Below are positions 4,110-46,423 of a stretch of DNA of 64,000 nucleotides, piece by piece. Location: positions 307,740-371,739 of IMG/VR virus record IMGVR_UViG_3300027985_000843; one strand, 5' to 3'. Below the pieces are notes generated by a model. That model saw only the letters and a list, made by a program, of their open reading frames with translations. It was not told the DNA's origin and searched no databases. Every line of letters begins with the position of its first letter. The stretch's first letter is position 1. The position numbers and the translations under genes were made by a program.

Positions 4110-4297
4110 CATGGCCGAAGGAAGCCGCTGACCTCATTGCCCTTCTTGTTGGGCAGCTTGCTGACGTGCCCGTTCAGAACAATCACGCGGGCGCCGCCCC
4201 CGTCGTCGACATCGTCGAGGATGGTCGTGTAGGTCGTGTAGTCAGCCGTATGGGCTTCCTAGTCAACCCTGGCTAATCCTCTTGTCACTTCCCATCG

Positions 4298-5308
4298 GTG
4301 ATGTTCACCGATAAAGAAGCTGCCACTCTTCGGGCGCGTCTGCTCGTAGCAATGTCCACGGGAGAAGCCAAGGACATCTTGGACTTTCCGCCCCACGCCA
4401 ACCCGTCTCCAGAAGAAGTTCGGAAGAGGCTACGGACCAAGGTCAAGGAACTGCGGGTTCACCCTGACCAAGGTGGCGGAGCCCACTCCCCAAAGATGGT
4501 CGAGTTGTCTGTGGCCGCTGACATCCTCCAGGGACGTCGGATCAACGACCTCACCGAGGTGCAGCCCGAAGACGAAGAGCTTCGGAAGCGTCGTGAAGCT
4601 GCTCAGCGAATCAAGACGCTTCAGGACAAGGCCACCAACGGTATGAAGCTCATCCAGAATGCCTACGTCCTGCAACTCCGGTTTCCCGGCAGAATCAGCC
4701 TTCGGGACTACCTGGTCGATGACTTCGTGGACGGCCTAGGCGATCTGCAAGATGCCGCTGACGAGGCCCTTGAGGGGGAACTGGAGCCTCGGGACGAGCG
4801 CGTGTGGAAAGAGGTCAGCAAGCTTTCGCACGACCTCGTGGGCCGAACCAGCCGCCTCGCGTCCAAGTACAAGGCCCTCTTGAAGGATGTCGAGTCCTTC
4901 CAGAAGAGCCCAAAGCTGGCGGACCTCAAAGCCCTCATGAAGCAAGCCGAAAAATACCGCGAGATGTTCCTCGATTTCCGAATGGCTGCGAGTCGAGTGT
5001 CCGGCCTGCTCGGAACCACCGAGACAGTGCCGATGGATGCCTACGACGCGTACTTCGACAAGTTCAACATCATCGACGCCTTCTCTACGCAGTTCAAGCA
5101 GATCAACTTCGATGTGCGCCGGTCTGGTGACATGGTGCTCGAAGCCATCGAGGCCGCCAAGGCTGAGGCCGACGAGTTCAAGGTCCAAACCCCGAAGCCC
5201 GAACAGTGGGTCGTCCCGGACGACTTCGACAAGCTCGTCTCTACCCTCACCGGCTACAAGGCCGCGTCCTCCAGAATGGTCGCGGCGCACTTCCTCCGAA
5301 ACATCTGA
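4298..5308 (+). CDS. J-domain (DnaJ-like) protein with helical C-terminus
   Basis: EAKDILDF...EEVRKR...VHPDQGG...ELSVAADIL; HPD motif. Confidence 0.7.
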   Translation: MMFTDKEAATLRARLLVAMSTGEAKDILDFPPHANPSPEEVRKRLRTKVKELRVHPDQGGGAHSPKMVELSVAADILQGRRINDLTEVQPEDEELRKRREAAQRIKTLQDKATNGMKLIQNAYVLQLRFPGRISLRDYLVDDFVDGLGDLQDAADEALEGELEPRDERVWKEVSKLSHDLVGRTSRLASKYKALLKDVESFQKSPKLADLKALMKQAEKYREMFLDFRMAASRVSGLLGTTETVPMDAYDAYFDKFNIIDAFSTQFKQINFDVRRSGDMVLEAIEAAKAEADEFKVQTPKPEQWVVPDDFDKLVSTLTGYKAASSRMVAAHFLRNI

Positions 5309-5317
5309 GAGGCCACC

Positions 5318-6022
5318 ATGCAGCTACGTGACGGAACCACAGTTCAGGATGGGCGTCTTGCACGTCTCCAGCAGTTCGACGAGCGCAGCCGGAAGTTCCC
5401 CATCCGCAAAACGGTGGGAGCCAAGCCCCTTCGCAGCTTCACCTGGAAGTGCGACAAGTGGCTCGACCAGGGGACAGATGGCGCGTGCGTCGGCTTCTCT
5501 TGGACCCATGAGCTGATCGCCCGCCCTGCCGTGGTGTCGGGCGTGGCCGCCGCATTCGCCAAAGAGAAGGTCTACTGGGAAGCCCAGAAGATCGACCCGT
5601 GGCCGGGTGGGTCCTATCCTGGGGCGAGTCCCGTCTACGAAGGGACCAGCGTCCTCGCAGGTGCCAAAGTCATCCAGAAGATGGGCTATATCGAGGAGTA
5701 CCGGTGGGCTTTCAGCGTGCAAGAGCTGGCCCTGGCCGTCGGCTACTGCGGGCCGGCCGTACTCGGCATCCCTTGGTACGAGGGGATGTTCAATTTTCTC
5801 AGTTGTGGGCACATCCACATCAGCGGCCAAGTCGCGGGCGGGCACGCCATCCTCTGCAATGGCGTGAACGTGAAAGACAGAACGTTCAAGCTTCACAACT
5901 CGTGGGGCAAGGGCTGGGGCAACAGCGGGGAAGCCCTCGTCTCGTGGGATGAGATGGACAGGCTTCTGCATGAGGGTGGGGAAGCCTGTATCCCCGTCGG
6001 CCGCACCCGAATCCTCAAGTAG
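5318..6022 (+). CDS. Papain-like cysteine peptidase (C1 family)
   Basis: DQG..GACVGFS (Gln/Cys), GGHAI (His), HNSWGKGWG (Asn). Confidence 0.88.
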   Translation: MQLRDGTTVQDGRLARLQQFDERSRKFPIRKTVGAKPLRSFTWKCDKWLDQGTDGACVGFSWTHELIARPAVVSGVAAAFAKEKVYWEAQKIDPWPGGSYPGASPVYEGTSVLAGAKVIQKMGYIEEYRWAFSVQELALAVGYCGPAVLGIPWYEGMFNFLSCGHIHISGQVAGGHAILCNGVNVKDRTFKLHNSWGKGWGNSGEALVSWDEMDRLLHEGGEACIPVGRTRILK

Positions 6023-36123: not shown

Positions 36124-37545
36124 ATGGTCACAGAATCAGACCTCCTAATCCACGGGCTCTCGAAAGCTTCCAGCGAAGCCTACACGAAAAGCTGGAAAGA
36201 GTTCGAGACCTGGTGCCAGGCGAACGGCAGATCAGCCCTCCCGGCCTCTGTCGAGACCATGGTGGAGTTCATCAAGAGCCACGAAGAGAAGTGGTCCGCT
36301 TCCACCCTGAGCCGAGCTGCGGCCGCCATCGCCAAGATCCACGTCCTGTACGGGGCCAGGTCCCCTGTCCAAGACGAGGCCAAGTTCATCCTCAAGAGCT
36401 TGGAAGCACAGCAGGAGCCCAACAGCAAAAAGGCCCTCACGAAAGACGAGTTCGAGACACTAGTTAGGCACACGAGCGGGCAGTCCCTCAAAGACATGCG
36501 GGACAAGGCTATGCTCCTGTTGGGCGTCTACACGGGCATGCCCATCGATACCCTGGTGGCCCTGCAAACAGAGCACATTGTCGAAGACAACGGCCGTTGG
36601 ACCATCGAGGTCGACGACTACCGGGTCGACTTCGACTTTGCTGTTGAACCCATCCCAAGCTTGTCCGCTTGGCTGAACTTCGCGAACATCGAAAAAGGCT
36701 ACGTTTTCCGCAATGTTCGGAAGAATGATACGCTGGGAGAGGGCAGCATCGGCTCGCGCCAGGTCAACCGCCTGCTCAAGAACCTTGCCACCAAAGCGGG
36801 GCTCGACGCCAAGGGCATCTCCTACGATTCGCTTCGTCGGAGCTTCCAGAATTCGGTCGGGCAGAAGATCGCCGTGGTCGTCCAAAAAACGGTTCGGCCC
36901 CGGACCTCTCCCAGCCTCCAGCGAGCCCTCTCCGACCTGGTCGAAGTGAAGGCTCAGGAAAAGCAGCTCCTCCAGGACTGGGTCGAAGCCTCCGAACGTG
37001 CTGAGGCCCTAAGCAAAGAGCTGAACCTCGTCACGGCACAGCTCCAGCAGATCCGTCAGGCCACCCAGGCCCACACGGTCACTGCGGACAGCAGCACACA
37101 AGACCTTCTCCGGTCCCTACTCTCCGGCTCGAAAACCCCCGAGGAGTGCCTTCAGCTCCTCGCCACGGCCTATCCCGAACGGATTGTGGTGCTGCCCTCA
37201 GCCGTGGCCTCTGCCCAGAAGGCACGCGCCTTCCGCTTCACAGACAAGCTGTTGCAGCTCTTCGATAAGCTCGCAACCGTCTACTTCGAGGCCCTGGCCT
37301 CAGGGAAGGGAGATACCGGCGCATACGCCTACATGGGGTGGAGCTATGCCGCCAACGACAGCTTCGGAAGCGCGTCCGCCAAGAAGCGGCGGGTCTTCGA
37401 ATACAAGGGCCAAGACATCCTCATGGAGAAGCACCTGCGGATCGGTCAGAAGCCCTCCCCCTCCGAAACCATCCGCGTCCACTTCGAGTGGATCGCCCCC
37501 GAGAAAAAGATCGTCATCGGCTGGTGCGGCCGCCACCTGGAGTAA
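36124..37545 (+). CDS. Degenerate Cre-like tyrosine-recombinase fold fused to coiled coil and possible RelE-like C-terminal domain
   Basis: SAM-like N-terminus (W..F..WC...PAS.ET..FI...S.STL); RD.AMLLLG..TGMP (Arg to Pro); SYDSLRR (His to Asp); no C-terminal Tyr motif; C-terminus MEKHLRIG...TIRVHF.W...KIVIGWCGRHL. Confidence 0.7.
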   Translation: MVTESDLLIHGLSKASSEAYTKSWKEFETWCQANGRSALPASVETMVEFIKSHEEKWSASTLSRAAAAIAKIHVLYGARSPVQDEAKFILKSLEAQQEPNSKKALTKDEFETLVRHTSGQSLKDMRDKAMLLLGVYTGMPIDTLVALQTEHIVEDNGRWTIEVDDYRVDFDFAVEPIPSLSAWLNFANIEKGYVFRNVRKNDTLGEGSIGSRQVNRLLKNLATKAGLDAKGISYDSLRRSFQNSVGQKIAVVVQKTVRPRTSPSLQRALSDLVEVKAQEKQLLQDWVEASERAEALSKELNLVTAQLQQIRQATQAHTVTADSSTQDLLRSLLSGSKTPEECLQLLATAYPERIVVLPSAVASAQKARAFRFTDKLLQLFDKLATVYFEALASGKGDTGAYAYMGWSYAANDSFGSASAKKRRVFEYKGQDILMEKHLRIGQKPSPSETIRVHFEWIAPEKKIVIGWCGRHLE

Positions 37546-37549
37546 ATCC

Positions 37550-38137
37550 ATGTACAACGAATTCGACTCCCTTGTTGAACAACTCCGCGACATGCAGCGG
37601 AACTCGAAACTCACCCTGGCCGTCGATGTTGGCCGGCTCATAGTCGATAGGATCTTCGGCGGGGACTACAGCATCCTCAAGCAGAACGGACACGACCATG
37701 TGAGCTTCCGAAAGCTCGCGGCCCACCCCAAGCTGCCGTTCTCGAAGTCCACCCTGTGGCGGTATGTTGGCGTGAGCGAGCTGGCCCAGAACTTCCCCTG
37801 GGTCATGCAGGCCAACGCCCTGACCACCGCCCACCTCATTGCCGTGCTGGGACTCCCGACCTCCGAACAGAAGCGCTTTCTCCGGGACTCCCTGAAGAAC
37901 CGCTGGACAGCCAAGGATCTACGAAAGCAGATAGGGAAGCCCATCGTTCCCAGGGCCAACCCTGTGGACGTGTTCCTTCAGAAGCTCGAACGTGCCCAGT
38001 CCGAACTGCCCCAAGACATGACCGACCTCGACCGGCAGCGAGTGATGAAGGCGCTTCAGAACACAGGAGACTGGTGCTACCGAAGCCTCGCCTCCCTCTC
38101 TGTCCTCTCTGAACAGAAGCAAGCTGCCAACACCTGA
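37550..38137 (+). CDS. DUF1016 (YhcG) N-terminal-like helical protein
   Basis: VGRLI...FSKSTLWRY...LTTAHLIAVL...RWTAKDLRKQI; 4 nt after upstream stop. Confidence 0.55.
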   Translation: MYNEFDSLVEQLRDMQRNSKLTLAVDVGRLIVDRIFGGDYSILKQNGHDHVSFRKLAAHPKLPFSKSTLWRYVGVSELAQNFPWVMQANALTTAHLIAVLGLPTSEQKRFLRDSLKNRWTAKDLRKQIGKPIVPRANPVDVFLQKLERAQSELPQDMTDLDRQRVMKALQNTGDWCYRSLASLSVLSEQKQAANT

Positions 38138-38461
38138 CTGTGGTATAGTTCGGAGCCATCATGTTCTACGGAAGCCCCGCCATCAGCCTTTCAAGTACCC
38201 AACCTTGGAGGCTGCATGCACGTCAATCATCGACGGAAGAATCATCCCCCCTGCGTCTCTCACGTGTGGCCTAGCGCCAAAGAGGCTCGCAAGATGCTCC
38301 ATCGTGCCTGCCGACGTACCGAGAAGCTCCGACTCCGCTTGGGAAAACCCCAAGCCCACCTCACCTCCCGCAAGTGCCCCTGCTGCGGCTTCTACCAATT
38401 CCTGCTGTCCTAGCTCGGTGTATGATCCAGCCTCAACCTGGAACACACCTCAAGGAACATC

Positions 38462-38905
38462 ATGAACACCAGCGTAGAAAGCATCCGTGAAGCGGAAGAC
38501 CTTCGAATCCTCAAGGTCGTAGACAGTGAAGTCCCGGCAGAGGCACAGGCGCCCGAACCCGATCCCATCCGCAAGTTCTGGGCGCACGACCCACCCTCTG
38601 ACAACGGTGTCAAGGGACACCCGCGCACCCTCATTGCCTTCACCGTCAAGGACAACAACGTCACCTACGCCGCCGTCACTTGGAACCCCGTCGAGAAGTT
38701 CGACCGACACCATGCCATGCGCCGCGTCCTCGGCCGCCTCAACTGCCCCAAGCGACAGCGTAACATTCCCCTCGTCGCCAGCCTCGGTGCCCACAAGACC
38801 ATCCTCAAGGACATCCTCGCGCGAGATCTCCAGAACCGCCGCACCGACACCTACCGTTTCCGGGCCTGCAACTACACCCAGGGGCACCAGAAGTTCGCCG
38901 TATGA
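38462..38905 (+). CDS. Hypothetical protein
   Basis: AAGGA SD; class II motif upstream. Confidence 0.7.
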   Translation: MNTSVESIREAEDLRILKVVDSEVPAEAQAPEPDPIRKFWAHDPPSDNGVKGHPRTLIAFTVKDNNVTYAAVTWNPVEKFDRHHAMRRVLGRLNCPKRQRNIPLVASLGAHKTILKDILARDLQNRRTDTYRFRACNYTQGHQKFAV

Positions 38906-40494
38906 CGGACTTCCGCCCATTCCCCTGCACGGCCTGCGGAGCCACCGTGAGCCTCGCCGCCGGCAAGGGGCGTACGCGCCTCATGGCCCCCGGAGTCGAA
39001 AGCCCCATCCCGGAGGACTTCCTCTTGCCCACGTGCGAGGAGTGCGGGGAGATCTTCTATTCCCCTGAGTTTTCAGAGCCCTTGGACCAGCTCATCAAAC
39101 AAAAGGCCCCCTAGCCGTTTGTAGGGAGCCTCTGCGAAACGCAACACGACAAGCATACACCGACAATTCGACCGAGCGGGCGATTATTTGTCTCAGACAA
39201 GTCCGCTGGCCCGTTTGTAGAGCATGAAGCCCTTGATCATGTTCTCGCTTGTCGTTCTTCTGCTCGCCATCTCCGCTTGGGCCGCCATCTCCGGATGGGG
39301 TATGCCCGGCCTGTTCTACGGCTGGGTATCCGCCTTCAGCCTGCTTACGGCTGAAAGAGTCCTCCGGTCCGTCTCCTGAGGCGGTGTATGGTCCGAGTAT
39401 GCCTAACTCGGACTTCTGCATCACGTTCAAGGACGGTCAGCCTGTTGCCGCCAAGAGGCTCCCTGACGGGGTCTCCTACGGCATCAGGCACTACAACGAT
39501 GCCATCGCGGTCGTCATCTCAGCCACGAGCCTTCTAGCCGCCGTCACCGAGGCCACAAGCCTATTGTCTGATGGGGACAACCCGTGAGCACGAACGATGA
39601 GCCCCTCCCCGACTTTCGAAACGGCATGTATGTGCGCGTAGAGCGGGTAACATCCGGCACATGGTCCGCTCACCTGATGAAGCCTGTGGGCATGTTCAGG
39701 AAGAGCAAGATCGTCCGTTCGGTCCACGGAACATCTGATGTCAATGCCGCTCAAGCCATGCTCGCCTCCCTCAGGGAAGAGGTGTCCGAGCCTACCATGA
39801 TCCGCGTCATTGCCAGCCAACCCTATACAGCCCTCATCGAACCATGAGCCTTGACCAAGACCACCTCATCATCGTCCTACGCTGGGAGTAACGCCATGCA
39901 CACCACAAGCGGCCTCGCCAAAGATGGAACCGAATTCCACCTCCACCACAACAGCGACTTCTCAGGCAATGCATCCCTCGTCCTGCACCAACCAGGTACC
40001 AGCCACTCCAACGATAAACGAATTGAACTCCCAGGAGAGGTCGTCAAAGCCCTCGCCATGCTCATCGCCGCCGATGTCATCCGAACCGCCGTCCAAGAAG
40101 CTGTCGAACTCGCCATCAAGAACACAGTACGATGACCCTCGTCTTCCTCGCCCTTCTGCTGATCGCCATCGTCGCAGTCACGTGCCACGTGCTGTATCAC
40201 ATCGGCTTCGAACGCGGGCACGCCGCCGGCTGCCAGTTCATCATCGAACGTGATGAAGCCATTCGAGCAAACGAAGTACGACAGAACCGAAAGTCCTAGA
40301 CTATGGTCCTCAAGGTCTCCTGCAAACACGAACTCATTCTCCAAGAGGAATCCTTCACGTGGTGCCGGTCCTGCGGCGCCATCAAGATCAAGGGCCGGTG
40401 GCGCCACCCCCACCGCAACCAAACGAAGGGCCAGGACTTCGCGTGCTTCGTCGACCGGGGTATCCCCCTGTCCAAGCACAGTGTATGATCGGGC

Positions 40495-40764
40495 ATGGTC
40501 GACATCAAACGCGGAACCTTCTTCGACATAGGTCACGGCGTCACCCTCGAACCCGTCTACTTCGACGGTAGCTTGGAGGCCGTCGAATACACCCACCCGG
40601 ACAAGGAGGGCAAGCCGTGCGTCGGCTGGGTCCCCCTCAAGCCCCGAAACAAGCTCGGTTGGGACCTCCTCAACGAGGAACCGCTGACCCTGTCCCCCTC
40701 CCTGCTATGCCGCCGCTGCGGCCATCACGGATTCATCCGAAACGGCAAATGGGTGCCCGCCTGA
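40495..40764 (+). CDS. DUF6527-like protein
   Basis: PLTLSPSLLCRRCGHHGFIRNGKW. Confidence 0.7.
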   Translation: MVDIKRGTFFDIGHGVTLEPVYFDGSLEAVEYTHPDKEGKPCVGWVPLKPRNKLGWDLLNEEPLTLSPSLLCRRCGHHGFIRNGKWVPA

Positions 40765-40801
40765 CTGCCTCGTAAAGGCCCGGCCGGTGTATCTTGGTGT
40801 G

Positions 40802-41368
40802 GTGAGTGATACGACCAAGATCCAAAGCCATCTGGAAAAGAGGCTCAAGGCGATCCAAGGCCGCCACAACTTCAATCCTCGGGTGGGCTCTCGACAGGTC
40901 AGAGAACACCCTGAACTCCGTCAGGAGTTCGGAGCTTTCCAAGAGTTGCTCAAGCTCCTGGAGGTGCTTGATCTGGACATCGCTATCCCGTACGACCCCG
41001 CTGGACTCGACATCAGAAAAACCACCAAGGTCGAAGCGAAACCGGTGTACGTGTATTTCATGCGAGAGCAGGGTGACCCTATCTGGAAGATAGGATACTC
41101 CAGCAACCTGTACCAGAGAAAGGGCGGTGTTCAGACGGGAAACTCCAACTACGTCGGCATCGTGCACAAGATCGCATGCAAGGACGTGGAGGAAGCTCGC
41201 TCACGTGAGAAGCAACTACACCGCTACTTCGAGAAGCTCAAGACGCGTCACCACAACAGCTCCGTGAAGGGAGAGTGGTATCGAATCCGACCGTCCGAGG
41301 TCACTGCCACTGTCAAACGGCTGAAGACCGAAGGATGGGATTGGTTGAAAGCAGGACGGCCCTCTTGA
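40802..41368 (+). CDS. T5orf172/GIY-YIG family nuclease
   Basis: VYVYF...KIGYSSNLYQR...VQTGN...EKQLHRYF...GEWY; class II promoter; stop abuts the cas ORF. Confidence 0.85.
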   Translation: MSDTTKIQSHLEKRLKAIQGRHNFNPRVGSRQVREHPELRQEFGAFQELLKLLEVLDLDIAIPYDPAGLDIRKTTKVEAKPVYVYFMREQGDPIWKIGYSSNLYQRKGGVQTGNSNYVGIVHKIACKDVEEARSREKQLHRYFEKLKTRHHNSSVKGEWYRIRPSEVTATVKRLKTEGWDWLKAGRPS

Positions 41369-43663
41369 ATGGCCGGAACAAAGGTGGCCTACGACCTATT
41401 GAACGGTAGGACCCATGCACATACGCATAACCCAGACGAGATGAACATGACGAAAAAGCAGTATTCGACAGCCCGCAAAGTGTCCAAGACACCCACCAGG
41501 AACTTCGTGTACGGAGTGGGCAACAAGGGTGAACAGCCCTTCCCCAAAGATATCATCCAGGACCAGTTGTGGAAGGCCCACGACTACAAGGCAACTGTGC
41601 TGTGGAACCATTGCCTGAGGGTCGACGAAGAGACCGCAATCCTGTGTGAGGTCGAACCCCGCCTGACGGAGCTGGACCAGCAAGCCAAAGAGCTGTCCGC
41701 TGAAATCAAAACCATGCGGACCGAACTGAACATCCCCAAGGGGTGTCGGGACGACTCCCCCGAGAGTGCAGCCATCAAGGCACTCACAATCCAGCGAAGC
41801 AGCATCTACGAGGAGATGTCGACGCTCCGTAAGGCGGCATTCAAGACGATCGAAGGCCCCCAGAAAGAATTCGATGAGGCGCTGGGGCAAGCCCTCTTGA
41901 AGATGGCCGCCGAACGTGATCCCAGCTTCGCCCCTCTCCTCGACGGGTGTCCCAAGGACGAAGACCCCGACGAGTTCAAGAAGAAGGTGACTCGGGCAAT
42001 CAACACCATCGGCCCGCGTAACCCCGAACGGGTTGCCTTGGTCAAACGCATGACTGACGAGATGCTCTCCAGTGACGCGGTTCCCGACTTGATGAAGCGG
42101 CTCAAGGAGGTCGAACGGCGCTGCCACGAGAAGAACACCTTGGCACGCAATAACTCCGGGTGCTTCTCCGGGACCTATCAAGCCGTCGACAGCGCCGTCA
42201 AAGACGCCATCCGGAAGTCCTACCGCCCCAGGATCCCCAAGTACGAGCACACGGGCAAGATCGGCATCCAGCTGACCAAGGGGATCAACACCAAGGGCGA
42301 GGTCGTCAAGGGGCTGCCCGTCTCCAGTGTGTTCGACACCCGCCAGAAGTTCTCCCTCGAACTGCTCCCGAACCACAAGGTCTACGGAGCTGCTGGCAAG
42401 AAGATAAAAGTGATGGCCCGGGCTCGAATCCGAGTCAAGCGAAACGTCTGCGTGGAAGCTCTCGTTGTCCTGCACCGACCCTTGCCTGAAGACGGATTGA
42501 TCAAGTGGGCCTACCTGGAGGTCAAAAAGGACGGCCTCCGAACCCGCTACGAACTCCGGCTGGTTATCGAGTTCACTCCCCAGCCCAAGCCCCGAACCAA
42601 CAGTAAGCTGCCCCTGCTCGCCATCAACCTCGGGTACCGATCCATGGATGATGGCACCATCCGACTCGCTACCACTTGGGACGGCGAGAATATCGGAGGC
42701 ATCACCCTGCCCGCCCACATCAAAGAAGACGAGGACCTCTCACGCCGGCTCGAAAGCTACGCGGGGAAGCACTTCACGTACGTCAAGAAAGAGCTGTCGA
42801 AGTGGAAGGGCAAGAACAAGAAGGACCTGCCAGAAGACCTGAAGGACTTCCTCCAGTTCAGCGGGCAGTGGCGTGCTCATGGTAAGCTCGCAAAGGCTAC
42901 TCGCATGATGGTCAATGCCTTCGTCCCGGAAGCCAGGGAGACCATCAAGCGACTGTGGCACGAGTGGCGCGTGGAACGTCTCAGTACAGGGGAAGGTGTC
43001 TTCCGTGTGCCCCGGAAGGGCAGCTGCCGCAAGGACTGGGAAAAGGAGGACCTGTTCGACAGCTGGCCCTTCCTGGAGGCTTGGTTCCAGAAGCATGGAG
43101 TCCGAAGCCGCGACGCCCGCTTTGCCCTGTACCTGGAATGGTGGCGCATCAAGGACGATCACCTCATCGGCCTGTCCAAGCACCTCCGAACCAGGTACAA
43201 GCTCAGGATCCGGGAAATCATTCGGATGCAAGTGGCCCGGTGGCGAGAATCCTACGAAGTCGTTGCCAGCAACGAGTGGGATATGCGGAAGACGGCCAAG
43301 AAGCCGAAGCCCGAGAACGACACCCGCACCCACCAAGAAAAGGCCGCCAACAGCGTCCGGCAGATCAGCGGGCCCGGTGCCGTAACTGCCTCTCTCAAGG
43401 AGTCCTTCAAGGGCCGTCTCATCAAGACCAACTCCAAGGACATCTCGAAGACGCACTTCGGGTGCAACGGAGAAGGCGTCGGTGTCGACGTGGACCGCTA
43501 CTGCGGCAAGTGTGGGAGGACCTACGACCAAGACGTCAACGCGGTCCTCCACACCTGGAAGGCCGCCAACGAAGTCCTCAACGGCCCGTCTGACCCATCC
43601 GAGGACAAGCCCCAGAAAGGTCCCGCGAAACGCTCGAAGCGAAGGTCCAACCTCGAAACATGA
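41369..43663 (+). CDS. cas12m: Type V-M (V-U1) Cas12m-like effector, RuvC probably inactive (alternative start ATG 41441/41447)
   Basis: Colinear motifs recalled from Cas12m: DQLWKAH, HTGKIGIQL, LHRPLPED, LAINLGYRSMDDG (RuvC-I D to N), ASNEWD, HFGC...CGKC zinc finger, YDQD; adjacent CRISPR array. Confidence 0.85.
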   Translation: MAGTKVAYDLLNGRTHAHTHNPDEMNMTKKQYSTARKVSKTPTRNFVYGVGNKGEQPFPKDIIQDQLWKAHDYKATVLWNHCLRVDEETAILCEVEPRLTELDQQAKELSAEIKTMRTELNIPKGCRDDSPESAAIKALTIQRSSIYEEMSTLRKAAFKTIEGPQKEFDEALGQALLKMAAERDPSFAPLLDGCPKDEDPDEFKKKVTRAINTIGPRNPERVALVKRMTDEMLSSDAVPDLMKRLKEVERRCHEKNTLARNNSGCFSGTYQAVDSAVKDAIRKSYRPRIPKYEHTGKIGIQLTKGINTKGEVVKGLPVSSVFDTRQKFSLELLPNHKVYGAAGKKIKVMARARIRVKRNVCVEALVVLHRPLPEDGLIKWAYLEVKKDGLRTRYELRLVIEFTPQPKPRTNSKLPLLAINLGYRSMDDGTIRLATTWDGENIGGITLPAHIKEDEDLSRRLESYAGKHFTYVKKELSKWKGKNKKDLPEDLKDFLQFSGQWRAHGKLAKATRMMVNAFVPEARETIKRLWHEWRVERLSTGEGVFRVPRKGSCRKDWEKEDLFDSWPFLEAWFQKHGVRSRDARFALYLEWWRIKDDHLIGLSKHLRTRYKLRIREIIRMQVARWRESYEVVASNEWDMRKTAKKPKPENDTRTHQEKAANSVRQISGPGAVTASLKESFKGRLIKTNSKDISKTHFGCNGEGVGVDVDRYCGKCGRTYDQDVNAVLHTWKAANEVLNGPSDPSEDKPQKGPAKRSKRRSNLET
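41377..41412 (+). CRISPR. Orphan CRISPR repeat at the 5' end of cas12m
   Basis: aacaaaggtggcctacgacctattgaacggtaggac, 31/36 identical to the array repeat. Confidence 0.85.
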
Positions 43664-43901
43664 CGTCGGCGAAGATACTTGCGCCGAACTTGCCACGCTC
43701 GGTGTAAGTATCACGAGCGGTCGAGTGCTCCGGAAAATTCGGGGACCTCTCGCACAGCTCCCAGGTGTTTGAAAACCCACGATTTCTCTGCCTCCGAGAA
43801 GGCTCAGTGGCGTGCTGGACATGCTCAACACTTGAACGAAATAAGAGGCTCTCGCAGACCCCGGTCTAAGTGACCGTATTTAGGGGTATTCTGCGATACC
43901 T
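43664..43901 (+). promoter_or_regulatory. CRISPR leader
   Basis: Non-coding gap between cas stop and first repeat; CTCTCGCA occurs twice; cggtgtaagta near 43700. Confidence 0.6.
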
Positions 43902-45175
43902 CTCAAAGGTGGCCCACGACCTATTGAATGGTGGGACATGCCTTCATCACCCCATTGCTGGCCTGGGCCGCACGCTCAAAGGTGGCCCACGACCTATTGA
44001 ATGGTGGGACCAGCAGGTGGGCCTCAGTGAGATGACGGCCCAAAGCATCTCAAAGGTGGCCCACGACCTATTGAATGGTGGGACGTTCCCGTTGCGGTAT
44101 GGCGGGATTGGCTTGAGCACTCAAAGGTGGCCCACGACCTATTGAATGGTGGGACGACCGGGTCAACGAACCTCAATCCTCAAAGGTGGTCCACGACCTA
44201 TTGAATGGTGGGACGAGTAGCCGTCCTGCTTGAGCACCCGAACTGCTCCTCTCAAAGGTGGCCCACGACCTATTGAATGGTGGGACTGGACGCCGACCTC
44301 ACCCTGCTCGCCGGGCGGCATCCTCAAAGGTGACCCACGACCTATTGAATGGTGGGGCTCATAGAACTGGCTCGTACGACCACCATACTCCCACCTCAAA
44401 GGTGACCCACGACCTATTGAATGGTGGGGCCAGAACTCAATCGGCCAAAGAAGCGCACGACGAAGAACTCAAAGGTGACCCACGACCTATTGAATGGTGG
44501 GGCGTGTAAACGCGTGCACTGACTCCTCCCGCGTCGGGCGCTCAAAGGTGACCCACGACCTATTGAATGGTGGGACAGGCGCACAATCCGGGATAGCTCA
44601 AAGGTGGCCTACGACATATCGAATGGTGGGACCTCAGCTCGCTGAGACCAAAGGTGGCCCACGACCTATTGAATGGTGGGACGACACGCTCCCGCTCACG
44701 GTCGTAGCCGTACTCCCCACCTCAAAGGTGGCCCACGACCTATTGAATGGTGGGACAGAAGTAACCCGATCTCACCTTCTTGGTCGGGCCGACTCAAAGG
44801 TGGCCCACGACCTATTGAATGGTGGGACGGTGATGAAGCCCCACGACCATGCTCTCAAAGGTGACCCACGACCTATTGAATGGTGGGGCAGTTGACTCAT
44901 CATCGGGAGTAGGGCCCCGCCTCAAAGGTGGCCCACAGCCTATTGAATGGTGGGACTACCGGCAGCCTTCCATGGGTTTCCCGCCCGTCACCTCAAAGGT
45001 GGCCCACGACCTATTGAATGGTGGGACGCGGTCCTCCTGGAGCCCCACACTTCGTGGGCACTATCGCTCAAAGGTGGCCCACGACCTATTGAATGGTGGG
45101 ACATCCTGCACCCCGAGGCCATCCAATGGCTACGTGATGCTCAAAGGTGGCCCACGACCTATTGAATGGTGGGAC
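43902..45175 (+). CRISPR. CRISPR array, 19 repeats / 18 spacers
   Basis: Repeat CTCAAAGGTGGCCCACGACCTATTGAATGGTGGGAC (36 bp); spacer lengths 37,38,35,23,36,36,36,37,37,20,14,38,36,25,31,35,39,37. Confidence 0.98.
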
Positions 45176-45216
45176 CCGAAGTAAATCAGCCTCTCGTATC
45201 GGTGTAGAGTCCCCTC

Positions 45217-45654
45217 ATGTCCAACGCCACCGACTTCGCCAAAGTCTTCCTGTCCGCCCTGTCCAAGGCCGTCGAACACAACAGCAACGCTGTCCGGGTA
45301 ATCGCTGAGACCCTCGGTGTCCCCCATCGACCCGAACTCGAAAAGGATGGACCACGAGGCCCGCGCATCAGGACCTTCTACGAGAACGGCCGCCTCAAAA
45401 GCTCTCGTGTCGGCGAACTGCTCCCGGGCTCCGTCGACAACTCTCCAGACACCTACAACAGCGTCAACGAAGCCCTCGCCCTCATGAAGAACGACACGCT
45501 CACCGGCATGTACTTCCACGCCCCGAGCCTCAACCTCGTGCTTATGACCCTCTCAGGTAAGAAGATCGGCATCCGCATGATCGACCTCCGAGGCCGCACC
45601 CCCTATCTCATCCAAGAACTCAAGAGCATGTCCGAGGCTCGTATGCTCTCGTAG
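45217..45654 (+). CDS. Hypothetical protein
   Basis: Class II promoter right after the array. Confidence 0.75.
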   Translation: MSNATDFAKVFLSALSKAVEHNSNAVRVIAETLGVPHRPELEKDGPRGPRIRTFYENGRLKSSRVGELLPGSVDNSPDTYNSVNEALALMKNDTLTGMYFHAPSLNLVLMTLSGKKIGIRMIDLRGRTPYLIQELKSMSEARMLS

Positions 45655-45844
45655 TCAGAGGTCAAGATGCGAATCAGCTATTTCACCCACGAAAATCTCA
45701 CCATCGAGGCCAGAATCCAGATCCTGAAAGACTCCATCGCCTTTCTGGATAACCGGTGGCCCAACGGCGCAATCGCCGTGCAGCTCCGAGACCGGAAGCT
45801 CAAACAGCTCCGGCACCTGGAAGCTTCGATACAGGGAGATCAAG

Positions 45845-46423
45845 ATGCAACTGTGGATTGAACACGTACAGACCCTGTGGATCCTCCAACAAGACCGGGA
45901 CGGCCTCCTCGTTGTCCTCCCGCCCAACGCGAAAGTCGTGGGCTCGGTAGATGGCAACGAAGGGACGCTGACCCCCCTGAAGGCCATCCCCACGGAAGTG
46001 CAGAAAGAAGTCCGGTCCGTTCCAAACGTGTCCGTCTACGAACTGACCCCCGACAACGCCCGCACACACAAGCACCTCTTCCTCCCCGCCGAGAACACCA
46101 TGTACTGGTGGATCATGCTCGACCCCAAGAAAGAGCACTTCGACATCGCCATCTCCATCGACGTGGTGAGCAAGGTCCGACAAGTCAGCGTCATCGCGCG
46201 GCCCGACAGGGACCCGAACGACCGCCAAATCACCCTGTTCCGACCGCCCCCCACGTGGACAGTAACCCGGCCGAAGTCCCGCCAAGAAGCCCTGGAGCGC
46301 CGCCCGAGTTACGACCGGGGCCGCCGGGACGGGGAGGCGGGCAAGTCCCCTACCGACGCCACCGATGAATACCTCGCCGGCTACACCTCCGGCCGCAAAC
46401 AATTCCTAGAAAGTCATACCTGA
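45845..46423 (+). CDS. Hypothetical protein
   Basis: GGAG SD; track ORF. Confidence 0.7.
   Translation: MQLWIEHVQTLWILQQDRDGLLVVLPPNAKVVGSVDGNEGTLTPLKAIPTEVQKEVRSVPNVSVYELTPDNARTHKHLFLPAENTMYWWIMLDPKKEHFDIAISIDVVSKVRQVSVIARPDRDPNDRQITLFRPPPTWTVTRPKSRQEALERRPSYDRGRRDGEAGKSPTDATDEYLAGYTSGRKQFLESHT

What the first reader, a model, noticed from the sequence alone, without database searches (positions are those of the whole stretch)
41377..41440. Orphan repeat with a compensatory stem change at the start of cas12m: candidate autoregulation
Seen: a solitary repeat, 31/36 identical, about 2.5 kb from the array. In the predicted stem (CCCAC 12-16 / GTGGG 30-34), pair C14-G32 has become T14-A32, so the hairpin is preserved by a double change. 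A further degenerate repeat end (cttgaatggccggaac) lies just upstream, and 28 nt separate the repeat from ATG 41441. Inference: Cas12m either processes its own mRNA (negative feedback, also uncoupling it from the upstream nuclease gene) or makes a regulatory mini-guide starting ccatgcacatacgcataacc, analogous to Cre-type cas-regulating RNAs.
Basis: partly seen in the sequence, partly recalled or inferred. Interest (0 to 1): 0.76.

Follow-up and report, generated by a model that had tools for sequence, protein, structure and literature searches.

The report
Lone CRISPR repeat before phage cas12m
A huge phage from a hydrothermal vent carries an intact copy of its own CRISPR repeat just in front of its cas12m-like gene, and a second copy in front of another gene; these are most likely sites where the Cas protein binds or cuts the phage's own messages, but nothing here shows that they are used.

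Summary
Window 41377-41412 is a solitary copy of the 36-nt repeat (31/36 identical), 2.49 kb upstream of a 19-repeat array. Stem pair C-G has become T-A, and 28 nt separate the repeat from ATG 41441. About 25 homologues support that ATG, or ATG 41447, as the start.

The gene encodes a 740-aa Cas12m (V-U1/V-M) relative with Asn at RuvC-I, on a 372-kb viral contig.

New findings:
- A second solitary repeat (34/36) lies at genome 5995-6030, 12 nt upstream of another start codon.
- Stem and pseudoknot co-vary across three related systems, and both orphans keep them.
- Two protospacers in a co-occurring 32-kb contig give a 5'-TTC PAM.
- Neither orphan's downstream sequence has a PAM-flanked DNA target in the phage better than chance.
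- Ten distant relatives have a tight junction upstream of cas12m, with no repeat there.

The mini-guide reading is therefore unsupported. The reading that fits best is a cis-acting Cas12m binding and processing site in the T5orf172-cas12m message, giving negative feedback (confidence about 0.45). A harmless insertion relic remains a serious rival (about 0.3). No RNA data and no close relatives were found. I rate it a new variant of a known kind, the repeat-derived cas regulators.

The parts
40787..41368 (+). T5orf172/MUG113 (GIY-YIG-like) gene directly upstream of cas12m. Its stop codon, TGA 41366-41368, abuts ATG 41369.
   Evidence: Pfam MUG113 2.8e-10 and T5orf172 1.8e-9. Aligns end to end with the genes upstream of cas12m in L001, L002, L004 and L015. 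Its C-terminal tail is about 5 residues shorter than in those relatives.
41358..41378 (+). Possible remnant of a repeat 3' half (GGCCC..TcTTGAATGG..GGaAC) that includes the T5orf172 stop codon. Support is weak.
   Evidence: nhmmer E=54 genome-wide. Local alignment score 22, reached by 1.3% of random windows. The 5' part of that alignment is conserved coding sequence.
41377..41412 (+). Solitary CRISPR repeat (orphan 1), 31/36 identical to the array repeat. Stem arms are 41388-41392 and 41406-41410, with T41390-A41408 replacing C-G. The pseudoknot contact AGG 41382-41384 with CCT 41395-41397 is intact. The loop has T to C at 41404.
   Evidence: nhmmer E=1.7e-11; same hairpin as the array repeats; covariation.
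41413..41440 (+). 28-nt linker between the repeat and the cas12m start, in the position a spacer would occupy. It holds a weak SD-like ACGAG at 41436-41440.
   Evidence: No PAM-flanked DNA match elsewhere in the phage contig above chance. No contig other than the phage's own lay on 41413-41440.
41415..41444 (+). 9-codon mini-ORF starting 2 nt after the repeat. An AGGA at 41408-41411 sits inside the 3' stem arm. Its stop codon overlaps the cas12m ATG as ATGA, so it is a candidate for translational coupling.
   Evidence: Read directly. The same ATGA overlap joins T5orf172 and cas12m in L001 and L002.
41369..41440 (+). In-frame, stop-free 24-codon extension from ATG 41369, which the gene caller used to give 764 aa. 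It would place the repeat inside codons 3-15.
   Evidence: the database entry has 764 aa. The extension is absent from all roughly 25 homologues, whose N-termini are M-x(2-14)-ARKTS..PTK.
41441..43663 (+). cas12m-like gene, 740 aa from ATG 41441 (ATG 41447 is also possible). Predicted RuvC residues are N-E-D.
   Evidence: PDB Cas12m 23vw_A E=3.4e-20, with AINLG aligned to AIDLG. PADLOC Cas12u1 8.8e-44. Family profile search. N-terminal alignment.
43746..43775 (+). Conserved leader element CCTCTCGCA-N-TTTGAAAAC between cas12m and the array. A second CTCTCGCA lies at 43849.
   Evidence: The combination occurs once in the genome. It or a variant is present in front of the first repeat in the relatives examined.
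43902..45175 (+). CRISPR array of 19 repeats of 36 nt. Spacers are 14-40 nt. It is transcribed on the + strand.
   Evidence: Orientation and the 5'-TTC PAM come from two protospacers in a co-occurring 32-kb contig.
40755..40777 (-). Weak candidate DNA target of the second orphan's downstream sequence. It matches exactly over 10 nt from guide position 1 (12 of the first 13), 13 nt upstream of the T5orf172 start, but the flank is CTT rather than TTC.
   Evidence: The background of such exact matches is high. The PAM does not fit.

Best explanation
The solitary repeat is a cis-acting recognition site for the phage's own Cas12m-like protein, embedded in the T5orf172-cas12m message.

When transcribed, it folds into the same hairpin and pseudoknot as a pre-crRNA repeat. 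Free Cas12m binds it and, as Cas12m does with pre-crRNA, cuts near the 5' side of the repeat. That separates the T5orf172 cistron from the cas12m cistron. It also leaves Cas12m bound to the 5' end of its own mRNA, 2 nt from a 9-codon mini-ORF whose stop overlaps the cas12m ATG, and 28-34 nt from the cas12m start codon. Translation of cas12m would then fall when free protein exceeds the supply of array transcript. This is negative feedback titrated by pre-crRNA.

The second solitary repeat, 12 nt upstream of another ORF, would put that operon under the same control.

What is shown: the sequence, its structural integrity, its position and orientation, and the PAM. What is inferred: binding, cleavage, and any effect on translation.
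For: - Only 21 repeat copies exist in the 372-kb contig: 19 in the array and two solitary ones. Both solitary copies are on the sense strand, in short gaps between co-directional genes, and end 28 nt and 12 nt upstream of a start codon.
- The 5-bp stem and a 2-bp pseudoknot contact are 98.9% paired across 13 repeats of three systems. Four of the 7 pairs show double changes, and slid controls pair at 40-50%. Both orphans keep all of these pairs, whereas one in-array repeat (44597) has lost a pseudoknot pair.
- The orphan's stem change is compensatory, with a chance probability of about 0.014.
- Array orientation and a 5'-TTC PAM show that the orphans are in the orientation that yields a 5'-handle RNA.
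- In 10 distant relatives the junction upstream of cas12m runs from -23 to +22 nt (one is 106 nt and divergent) and never holds a repeat. Here it is 72 nt, filled by the repeat.
- The ATGA overlap typical of the relatives survives at the end of the mini-ORF.
- Characterised Cas12m proteins process pre-crRNA themselves, within or upstream of the repeat scaffold (PMC10442227; PMC11013384).
- The trans-guide alternative found no target.
Against: - There is no transcript evidence of any kind: no RNA run was listed.
- No close relative exists in which to test conservation. The feature is absent from all distant relatives, so it is recent and may be neutral.
- Any surviving insertion in a densely coded phage genome will lie in an intergenic gap near a start codon, so position alone says little.
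- Intact structure after 3 substitutions is not rare: 33-52% in the simulation.
- The T-A pair could be inherited from another array variant rather than selected in place.
- The hairpin is not thermodynamically unusual (z about 0).
- Processing by this 740-aa clade has not been demonstrated. The characterised Cas12m proteins are 24% identical or less (P0007).
Confidence: 0.45

Rival explanations
1. The repeat is a neutral relic. A fragment of an array (about 1.5 repeats) was inserted by recombination into the 3' end of T5orf172, or is the remains of a decayed mini-array. It is tolerated because both genes stayed expressible, and it has no regulatory role.
For: - The junction repeat is unique to this phage among 11 loci.
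- The array is visibly decaying or rearranging: spacers of 14, 20, 23 and 25 nt, and variant repeats.
- Relatives show arrays and mini-arrays scattered around the operon (L004 on both sides; L001 second array), so repeats do move.
- T5orf172 looks shortened by about 5 codons, and a possible repeat half sits at its stop codon.
- There is no RNA evidence.
Against: - Two independent solitary copies both keep the stem, the pseudoknot and the 3' end, while a repeat inside the array has lost a pseudoknot pair.
- The stem change is compensatory (p about 0.014).
- A recognisable repeat on the sense strand of an mRNA would be expected to be bound and cut by a self-processing Cas12m, so true neutrality would need the site to be ignored.
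Confidence: 0.3
2. The repeat encodes a CreR-type cr-like RNA. Repeat plus downstream sequence is processed into a guide that takes Cas12m to a partly matching, PAM-flanked DNA site (a cas promoter, another phage gene or a host gene) and represses transcription.
For: - Solitary repeat units next to cas12a are common, and one (Moraxella bovoculi CreR) represses the cas12a promoter (10.1101/2023.03.10.532045; PMC10120712).
- Cas12m works by DNA binding alone.
- The second orphan's downstream sequence matches exactly over 10 nt from guide position 1 (12 of the first 13), 13 nt upstream of the T5orf172 start.
- L001 carries a solitary repeat-like unit with two compensatory stem pairs beside a mini-array.
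Against: - For orphan 1 the best matches in the phage are chance level: 12/14 without a PAM, and at TTN sites at most 10 of the first 12 positions with an exact match from position 1 of at most 7 nt.
- The orphan-2 match is flanked by CTT, not the TTC seen at both real protospacers.
- Exact matches of 9-10 nt from position 1 are common: 73 for 21 guides against about 60 expected.
- No degenerate second repeat follows orphan 1.
- No other contig of the same metagenome lay on 41413-41440.
- Both 'guides' are the ribosome-binding regions of downstream ORFs.
Confidence: 0.12
3. The repeat is coding sequence. Translation starts at ATG 41369, coupled to the T5orf172 stop (TGAATG), and yields a 764-aa Cas12m with a 24-residue N-terminal extension. 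The repeat similarity is then only the history of that insert. This reading does not exclude the operator model.
For: - ATG 41369 abuts the stop codon and is in frame and stop-free through to 41441.
- The public gene call is 764 aa.
- Relatives couple the two genes tightly.
Against: - None of about 25 homologues has such an extension, and the conserved N-terminus aligns to 41441/41447.
- Two of the three frames of the repeat are open anyway, as read from the sequence.
Confidence: 0.1

Closest known systems
CreR / cr-like regulatory RNAs: degenerate mini-CRISPRs and standalone repeat units next to cas genes, including those upstream of cas12a in type V-A (10.1101/2023.03.10.532045; PMC10120712)
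   Same: Both are solitary copies near-identical to the cognate repeat, with the hairpin and handle preserved, sitting directly upstream of a type V effector gene. Both are expected to compete with array crRNAs for the effector and so to sense crRNA load.
   Different: CreR works through partial guide-DNA pairing at the cas promoter next to a canonical PAM. No such target was found here. This repeat lies inside an operon between two cistrons, not beside a promoter, and no second degenerate repeat follows it. The proposed action is on RNA.
RNA anti-CRISPRs (Racr): solitary repeat units in viral genomes (PMC10651486)
   Same: Both are solitary repeat units in a virus genome that mimic a CRISPR repeat and would bind a Cas protein.
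   Different: Racrs mimic the host's repeats, are usually not linked to cas genes, and sit just downstream of their own promoter. Here the repeat matches the phage's own array and lies next to the phage's own cas12m, inside a message.
Long-form tracrRNA (tracr-L) autorepression of the Cas9 operon.
   Same: Both are repeat-derived RNAs that make a class 2 effector repress its own expression.
   Different: tracr-L acts as a natural single guide on promoter DNA. Cas12m uses no tracrRNA, and no anti-repeat is present in this genome.
Autoregulation by RNA mimicry: ribosomal proteins on their own mRNAs, the MS2 coat protein operator hairpin, T4 RegA.
   Same: In each case a protein whose main ligand is a structured RNA binds a weaker copy of that structure at the translation start of its own message. 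Excess free protein then shuts off synthesis.
   Different: None of these involves a CRISPR effector or RNA cleavage. The resemblance is in how the circuit works, not in family membership.
Characterised type V-M Cas12m (MmCas12m2, GoCas12m, MsCas12m; PMC10442227, PMC11013384)
   Same: All share a homologous effector with an altered RuvC site, a 36-nt repeat with a stem and pseudoknot, a single crRNA, and a 5' T-rich PAM. Self-processing is known for the characterised proteins and assumed here.
   Different: This effector is about 740 aa rather than about 600 and is 24% identical or less to characterised members. It is carried by huge-phage-like contigs rather than plasmids, and is paired with a T5orf172 gene in 8 of 11 loci.

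Membership tests
Type V-M (Cas12m) CRISPR-Cas | Effector homologous to Cas12m / Cas12u1 | tested here: met
   PDB Cas12m 23vw_A E=3.4e-20 and UnCas12m4a 9.8e-6. PADLOC Cas12u1 8.8e-44, though a Cas12f model scores equally at 8e-44.
Type V-M (Cas12m) CRISPR-Cas | Non-canonical or inactivated RuvC catalytic residues | tested here: met
   RuvC-I Asp is Asn (AINLG aligned to AIDLG of the solved Cas12m). It is Asn in 5 of the 6 clade members aligned. E and D remain at the other two positions. Catalytic inactivity itself was not testable.
Type V-M (Cas12m) CRISPR-Cas | Single crRNA, no tracrRNA or anti-repeat | tested here: met
   No reverse-strand copy of the repeat anywhere in the 372-kb contig (best minus-strand nhmmer hit E=0.31).
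Type V-M (Cas12m) CRISPR-Cas | 5' PAM (T-rich or C-rich); TTN in MmCas12m2 | tested here: met
   Two protospacers (spacers 1 and 18) on one co-occurring 32-kb contig both have the 5' flank TTC. The sample is only two.
Type V-M (Cas12m) CRISPR-Cas | Compact size of about 600 aa | tested here: not met
   This protein is 740 aa. Most of the top-scoring clade members are about 635-840 aa. I treat it as a distinct larger clade related to V-M.
Type V-M (Cas12m) CRISPR-Cas | Autonomous pre-crRNA processing and DNA binding without cleavage | not testable with these tools
   Known for MmCas12m, MsCas12m and GoCas12m. Assumed here.
CreR / cr-like regulatory RNA | Degenerate repeat that keeps the handle and hairpin of the cognate repeat, in or next to the cas locus | tested here: met
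   31/36 identity, stem and pseudoknot intact, 28 nt upstream of cas12m.
CreR / cr-like regulatory RNA | Spacer-like part partly complementary to a cas (or toxin) promoter next to a canonical PAM | tested here: not met
   Orphan 1 has no TTN-flanked match above chance in the phage contig. Orphan 2 has an exact 10-nt match from guide position 1 upstream of T5orf172, but with a CTT flank. Host targets could not be tested.
CreR / cr-like regulatory RNA | Second, often very degenerate, repeat closing the mini-array | tested here: not met
   The 80 nt downstream of orphan 1 score at background level (score 14, p about 0.5).
CreR / cr-like regulatory RNA | Expressed and processed into a small crRNA-like RNA | not testable with these tools
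   No RNA run was listed. There is no sigma-70-like promoter in 38000-46000, but the host's promoter type is unknown.
Racr (RNA anti-CRISPR solitary repeat unit) | Virus-encoded solitary repeat that mimics the host's CRISPR repeat and is not linked to cas genes | tested here: not met
   The repeat matches the phage's own array and lies next to the phage's own cas12m.

The most novel reading that the evidence does not exclude
This Cas12m-like protein doubles as a sequence-specific RNA-binding repressor and RNase for phage messages that carry a repeat 'operator'. On this reading the two solitary repeats define a small post-transcriptional regulon: its own gene, and an unrelated operon downstream of a GmrSD-like gene. 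The output of that regulon would track the balance between free Cas12m and array transcript. That would be a natural, RNA-level counterpart of CreR/tracr-L autoregulation, and in the logic of its second target possibly of CRISPR-guarded modules such as CreTA.
Probability: 0.35. Interest if true: 0.75.

Novelty: new variant of a known kind. Interest (0 to 1): 0.55.

Why it matters
Repeat-derived RNAs that let CRISPR effectors control their own level are known (CreR, tracr-L, cr-like RNAs), but all characterised cases act on promoter DNA through a guide. A repeat used as an operator inside the effector's own message would be a simpler circuit that needs no guide. It would sense free protein against crRNA supply directly.

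It would also show that a self-processing type V effector shapes mRNAs in nature, which so far has only been engineered. It is easy to test in cell-free expression or in E. coli.

The locus also brings out a large and little-described clade of roughly 700-aa, RuvC-altered Cas12m relatives on huge-phage contigs. These are nearly always paired with a T5orf172 nuclease-like gene, which may matter for how a cleavage-dead effector achieves interference.

Tried and rejected
- RNA evidence: no RNA run was listed for the locus. The DNA runs come from one sample or study pair and add no variants.
- Close relatives: the exact repeat and a degenerate repeat pattern gave no hit in metagenome contigs or viral contigs. 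The protein has no relative above 33% identity. There were no matches in the phage or plasmid collections and none from the search for related loci.
- Protospacers by exact search: spacers 1, 2, 3 and 6 (22 nt each) gave no hit in viral contigs. The PAM came instead from contigs laid on the array.
- Self-targets: no array spacer matches the phage better than 26/36.
- Further hidden repeat copies: nhmmer and a 9-mismatch scan found only the 21 copies.
- Rfam: no hit in the window.
- The orphan-2 match upstream of T5orf172 looked promising at first. I downgraded it after the PAM (TTC, not CTT) and the high background of such exact matches became clear.
- The idea that CCTCTCGCA is a general phage promoter element: 9 copies against about 4 expected, with no shared extended motif. 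Not pursued.
- An L001 mini-array spacer against the L001 cas promoter: only 8-nt matches, which is chance level.
Full report
**What is there.** The window is the last 64 kb of a 371,739-bp viral contig (an IMG/VR record, CheckV estimate 78% complete) from a hydrothermal-vent metagenome. A CRISPR array of 19 repeats of 36 nt lies on the + strand at 43902-45175. One more copy lies at 41377-41412. It matches 31/36, or 3 mismatches in the 34-nt core, where 0 matches are expected by chance.

Its differences from the array repeat are:
- positions 1-2 of the repeat;
- T41390 and A41408, the two partners of one stem pair, so C-G has become T-A;
- a T-to-C change at 41404 in the loop.

All repeat variants fold into the same 5-bp hairpin.

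The 'further degenerate repeat end' is weak. It scores E=54 genome-wide. A local alignment is matched or beaten by 1.3% of random windows, and half of that alignment is conserved T5orf172 coding sequence.

**The genes.** ORF 41441-43663 is a Cas12m relative: PDB Cas12m E=3.4e-20 and PADLOC Cas12u1 8.8e-44. Asn replaces the RuvC-I Asp, both here and in 5 of 6 aligned clade members.

The public gene call starts at ATG 41369 (764 aa). That ATG abuts the stop codon of the upstream gene (TGAATG) and is in frame and stop-free down to 41441. However, the N-termini of about 25 homologues (M, then 2-14 residues, then ARKTS..PTK) align to ATG 41441 or 41447, and none has the 24-residue extension.

The upstream gene (40787-41368) is T5orf172/MUG113.

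**Family and context.** A profile of six members finds 4,023 cluster representatives at E<=1e-3. The nearest to this protein is 33% identical.

I examined ten relatives' loci. In seven of them, eight counting this one, a T5orf172-like gene sits directly upstream of cas12m. The junction upstream of cas12m is tight in nine of the ten: an ATGA overlap in L001 and L002, overlaps of 8 and 23 nt, and gaps of 4-22 nt. None of them holds a repeat there. In this phage the junction is 72 nt and is filled by the repeat.

Every relative has its array directly downstream of cas12m, or upstream of the operon in L004, behind a conserved leader element (CCTCTCGCA ... TTTGAAAA or variants).

**Repeat structure.** I aligned 13 repeats from three systems. 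The 5-bp stem and a 2-bp contact between the 5' AGG and a loop CCT are paired in 98.9% of cells. Four of the seven pairs show double changes, and slid controls pair at only 40-50%. This matches the stem-plus-pseudoknot scaffold described for Cas12m2 (PMC10442227).

The orphan's changed pair is the same pair that is T-A natively in L001. An array repeat (44597) carries the one-sided U-G state and has also lost a pseudoknot pair. Both solitary repeats keep everything. In a simulation of three random substitutions, a double pair-restoring change arose in 1.4% of trials, while simple retention of pairing arose in 33-52%. The compensatory change is therefore suggestive, but it is a single event.

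**A second solitary repeat.** Scans of the whole contig (regex, nhmmer, pattern search) find exactly 21 copies. The extra one is at genome 5995-6030 on the + strand and matches 34/36. It lies in the 52-nt gap between a GmrSD_N/DUF262-like gene and a 102-aa ORF. Only 12 nt, including a GAGG, separate the repeat from the ATG. The same copy appears in an independent Logan assembly of the same reads. Both orphans thus share one layout: sense strand, short gap between co-directional genes, just upstream of a start codon.

**PAM and activity.** I laid the metagenome's contigs on the array. This showed a 32,187-bp contig of different depth (20.6 against 13.7) carrying 26-nt exact matches to spacers 1 and 18. 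Both matches have the 5' flank TTC, and in both the PAM-proximal positions have diverged. This fixes the array's orientation, gives a 5'-TTC (TTN-like) PAM as in MmCas12m2, and shows that the system targets a co-occurring element.

**Test of the mini-guide idea.**
- The 28 nt after orphan 1 (and beyond) have no match elsewhere in the phage better than 12/14 without a PAM.
- At TTN sites the best match is 10 of the first 12 positions, with an exact match from guide position 1 of at most 7 nt.
- No other contig of the metagenome lay on this stretch.
- No degenerate second repeat follows it.
- Orphan 2's downstream sequence has an exact 10-nt match from position 1 (12 of the first 13) on the minus strand at 40765-40774, 13 nt upstream of the T5orf172 start. 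Its flank is CTT rather than TTC, and exact matches of 9-10 nt are common (73 seen for 21 guides against about 60 expected). I treat it as a weak lead only.

The Cre-type reading is therefore not supported for the reported repeat. A host target remains untestable.

**Most likely mechanism (inferred).** Characterised Cas12m proteins cut their own pre-crRNA within or upstream of the repeat scaffold and stay on the product. A structurally intact repeat on the sense strand of the T5orf172-cas12m message should therefore be bound and cut. That would separate the two cistrons and leave the protein on the 5' end of its own mRNA.

Three possible routes to Cas12m translation all pass this site:
- the in-frame ATG 41369, which would make the repeat codons 3-15;
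- a 9-codon mini-ORF from ATG 41415, 2 nt after the repeat, with an AGGA inside the 3' stem arm and a stop codon that overlaps ATG 41441 as ATGA (the same overlap that couples T5orf172 to cas12m in L001 and L002);
- direct initiation at 41441 or 41447.

Occupancy by an ~85-kDa protein (my estimate from the 740-residue length) would hinder each of these routes. Array transcripts would compete for the protein, so the loop would report free Cas12m relative to crRNA supply.

The preserved ATGA and the slightly shortened T5orf172 tail suggest that the repeat was inserted into the 3' end of T5orf172. I put this model at about 0.45.

**Rivals.**
- A neutral insertion relic, about 0.3. It is favoured by the lack of conservation in relatives, the visibly rearranging array, and the absence of any RNA data.
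- A trans-acting guide, about 0.12.
- A purely coding N-terminal extension, about 0.1. This does not exclude the operator model.

**Comparison and novelty.** The closest known kind is the family of repeat-derived cas regulators (CreR and cr-like RNAs, standalone repeat units upstream of cas12a, tracr-L) together with the viral solitary repeat units (Racr). The orphan meets the 'repeat-like, handle preserved, next to cas' criteria. It fails the defining guide-target-PAM criterion of CreR and the 'mimics the host's repeat' criterion of Racr. It would work more like classic autoregulation by RNA mimicry (ribosomal proteins, the MS2 coat protein operator). I rate it a new variant of a known kind. 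It is of moderate interest and is easily testable.

Noticed in passing
Outside the window: own genome C1:5995-6030 (= L014:5995-6030), + strand: A second solitary repeat (34/36 identical) lies in the 52-nt gap between a GmrSD_N/DUF262-like gene (5445-5990) and a 102-aa ORF (ATG 6043) that overlaps a 434-aa ORF. Only 12 nt, containing GAGG, separate the repeat from the ATG. The 102-aa and 434-aa products have no family match in Pfam, PHROGs or PADLOC.
   Followed up: partly
window 40787-43663; L001, L002/L003, L004/L005, L015, L019, L020, L021: A T5orf172/MUG113 (GIY-YIG-like) gene sits directly upstream of the cas12m-like gene, often overlapping it, in 8 of 11 loci. The effector has Asn at RuvC-I. 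No paper in the searchable library mentions both T5orf172 and Cas12. It may be a nuclease partner for a cleavage-dead effector.
   Followed up: partly
window 43938-43974 and 45103-45139 (spacers 1 and 18): A co-occurring 32,187-bp contig (depth 20.6 against 13.7 for the phage) carries 26-nt exact matches to both spacers. Both have the 5' flank TTC, and in both the PAM-proximal positions have diverged (in one case with a 1-nt length difference). They look like escape variants of a targeted element.
   Followed up: partly
window 43746-43775 and 43849-43856; L001 10172, 10330 and 4205-4215(-); L002 10215-10250; L004 6880-6895; L015, L016, L018-L021 tails: A conserved leader element (CCTCTCGCA or a close variant, then TTTGAAAA-like at variable spacing) precedes the first repeat in the relatives examined. 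The combination occurs only once in the 372-kb genome. It could be a promoter, a leader, or a binding site for an unknown factor.
   Followed up: partly
L001 3960-4303, minus strand: A second small array with a duplicated leader, followed by decaying repeats. Upstream of it lies a solitary repeat-like unit (4268-4303) whose stem differs from L001's own repeats by two compensatory pairs (CCTAC/GTAGG becomes CTTGC/GCAAG). No target was found within the 10-kb locus.
   Followed up: partly
L004 6915-7440 and 10270-10403: Repeats flank the T5orf172-cas12m operon on both sides. An 8-9-unit array ends in a degenerate repeat 20 nt upstream of the T5orf172 ATG. Three further repeats overlap the 3' end of the called cas12m ORF, so that ORF's C-terminal tail is probably read-through into repeats. 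An AcrVA2-like gene (weak Pfam hit) lies about 3 kb upstream.
   Followed up: no
window 44120-44900: The array is irregular. Spacers of 23, 20, 14, 25 and 31 nt sit among the usual 35-40 nt. Repeats 7-9 and 15 carry a paired change (G11A with A35G) at a purine-purine position flanking the stem. Repeat 11 has lost a pseudoknot pair. The first 10 nt of spacer 14 are the reverse complement of part of spacer 1.
   Followed up: no
window 40755-40777, minus strand: The sequence after the second solitary repeat matches this site exactly over 10 nt from guide position 1 (12 of the first 13), 13 nt upstream of the T5orf172 start. The flank is CTT rather than TTC, so it is probably chance, but it could be tested in a binding assay.
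   Followed up: yes
window 36124-37545: A 473-aa ORF with tyrosine recombinase/phage integrase domains lies about 4 kb upstream of the cas operon. No Cas1 was found anywhere in the contig.
   Followed up: no
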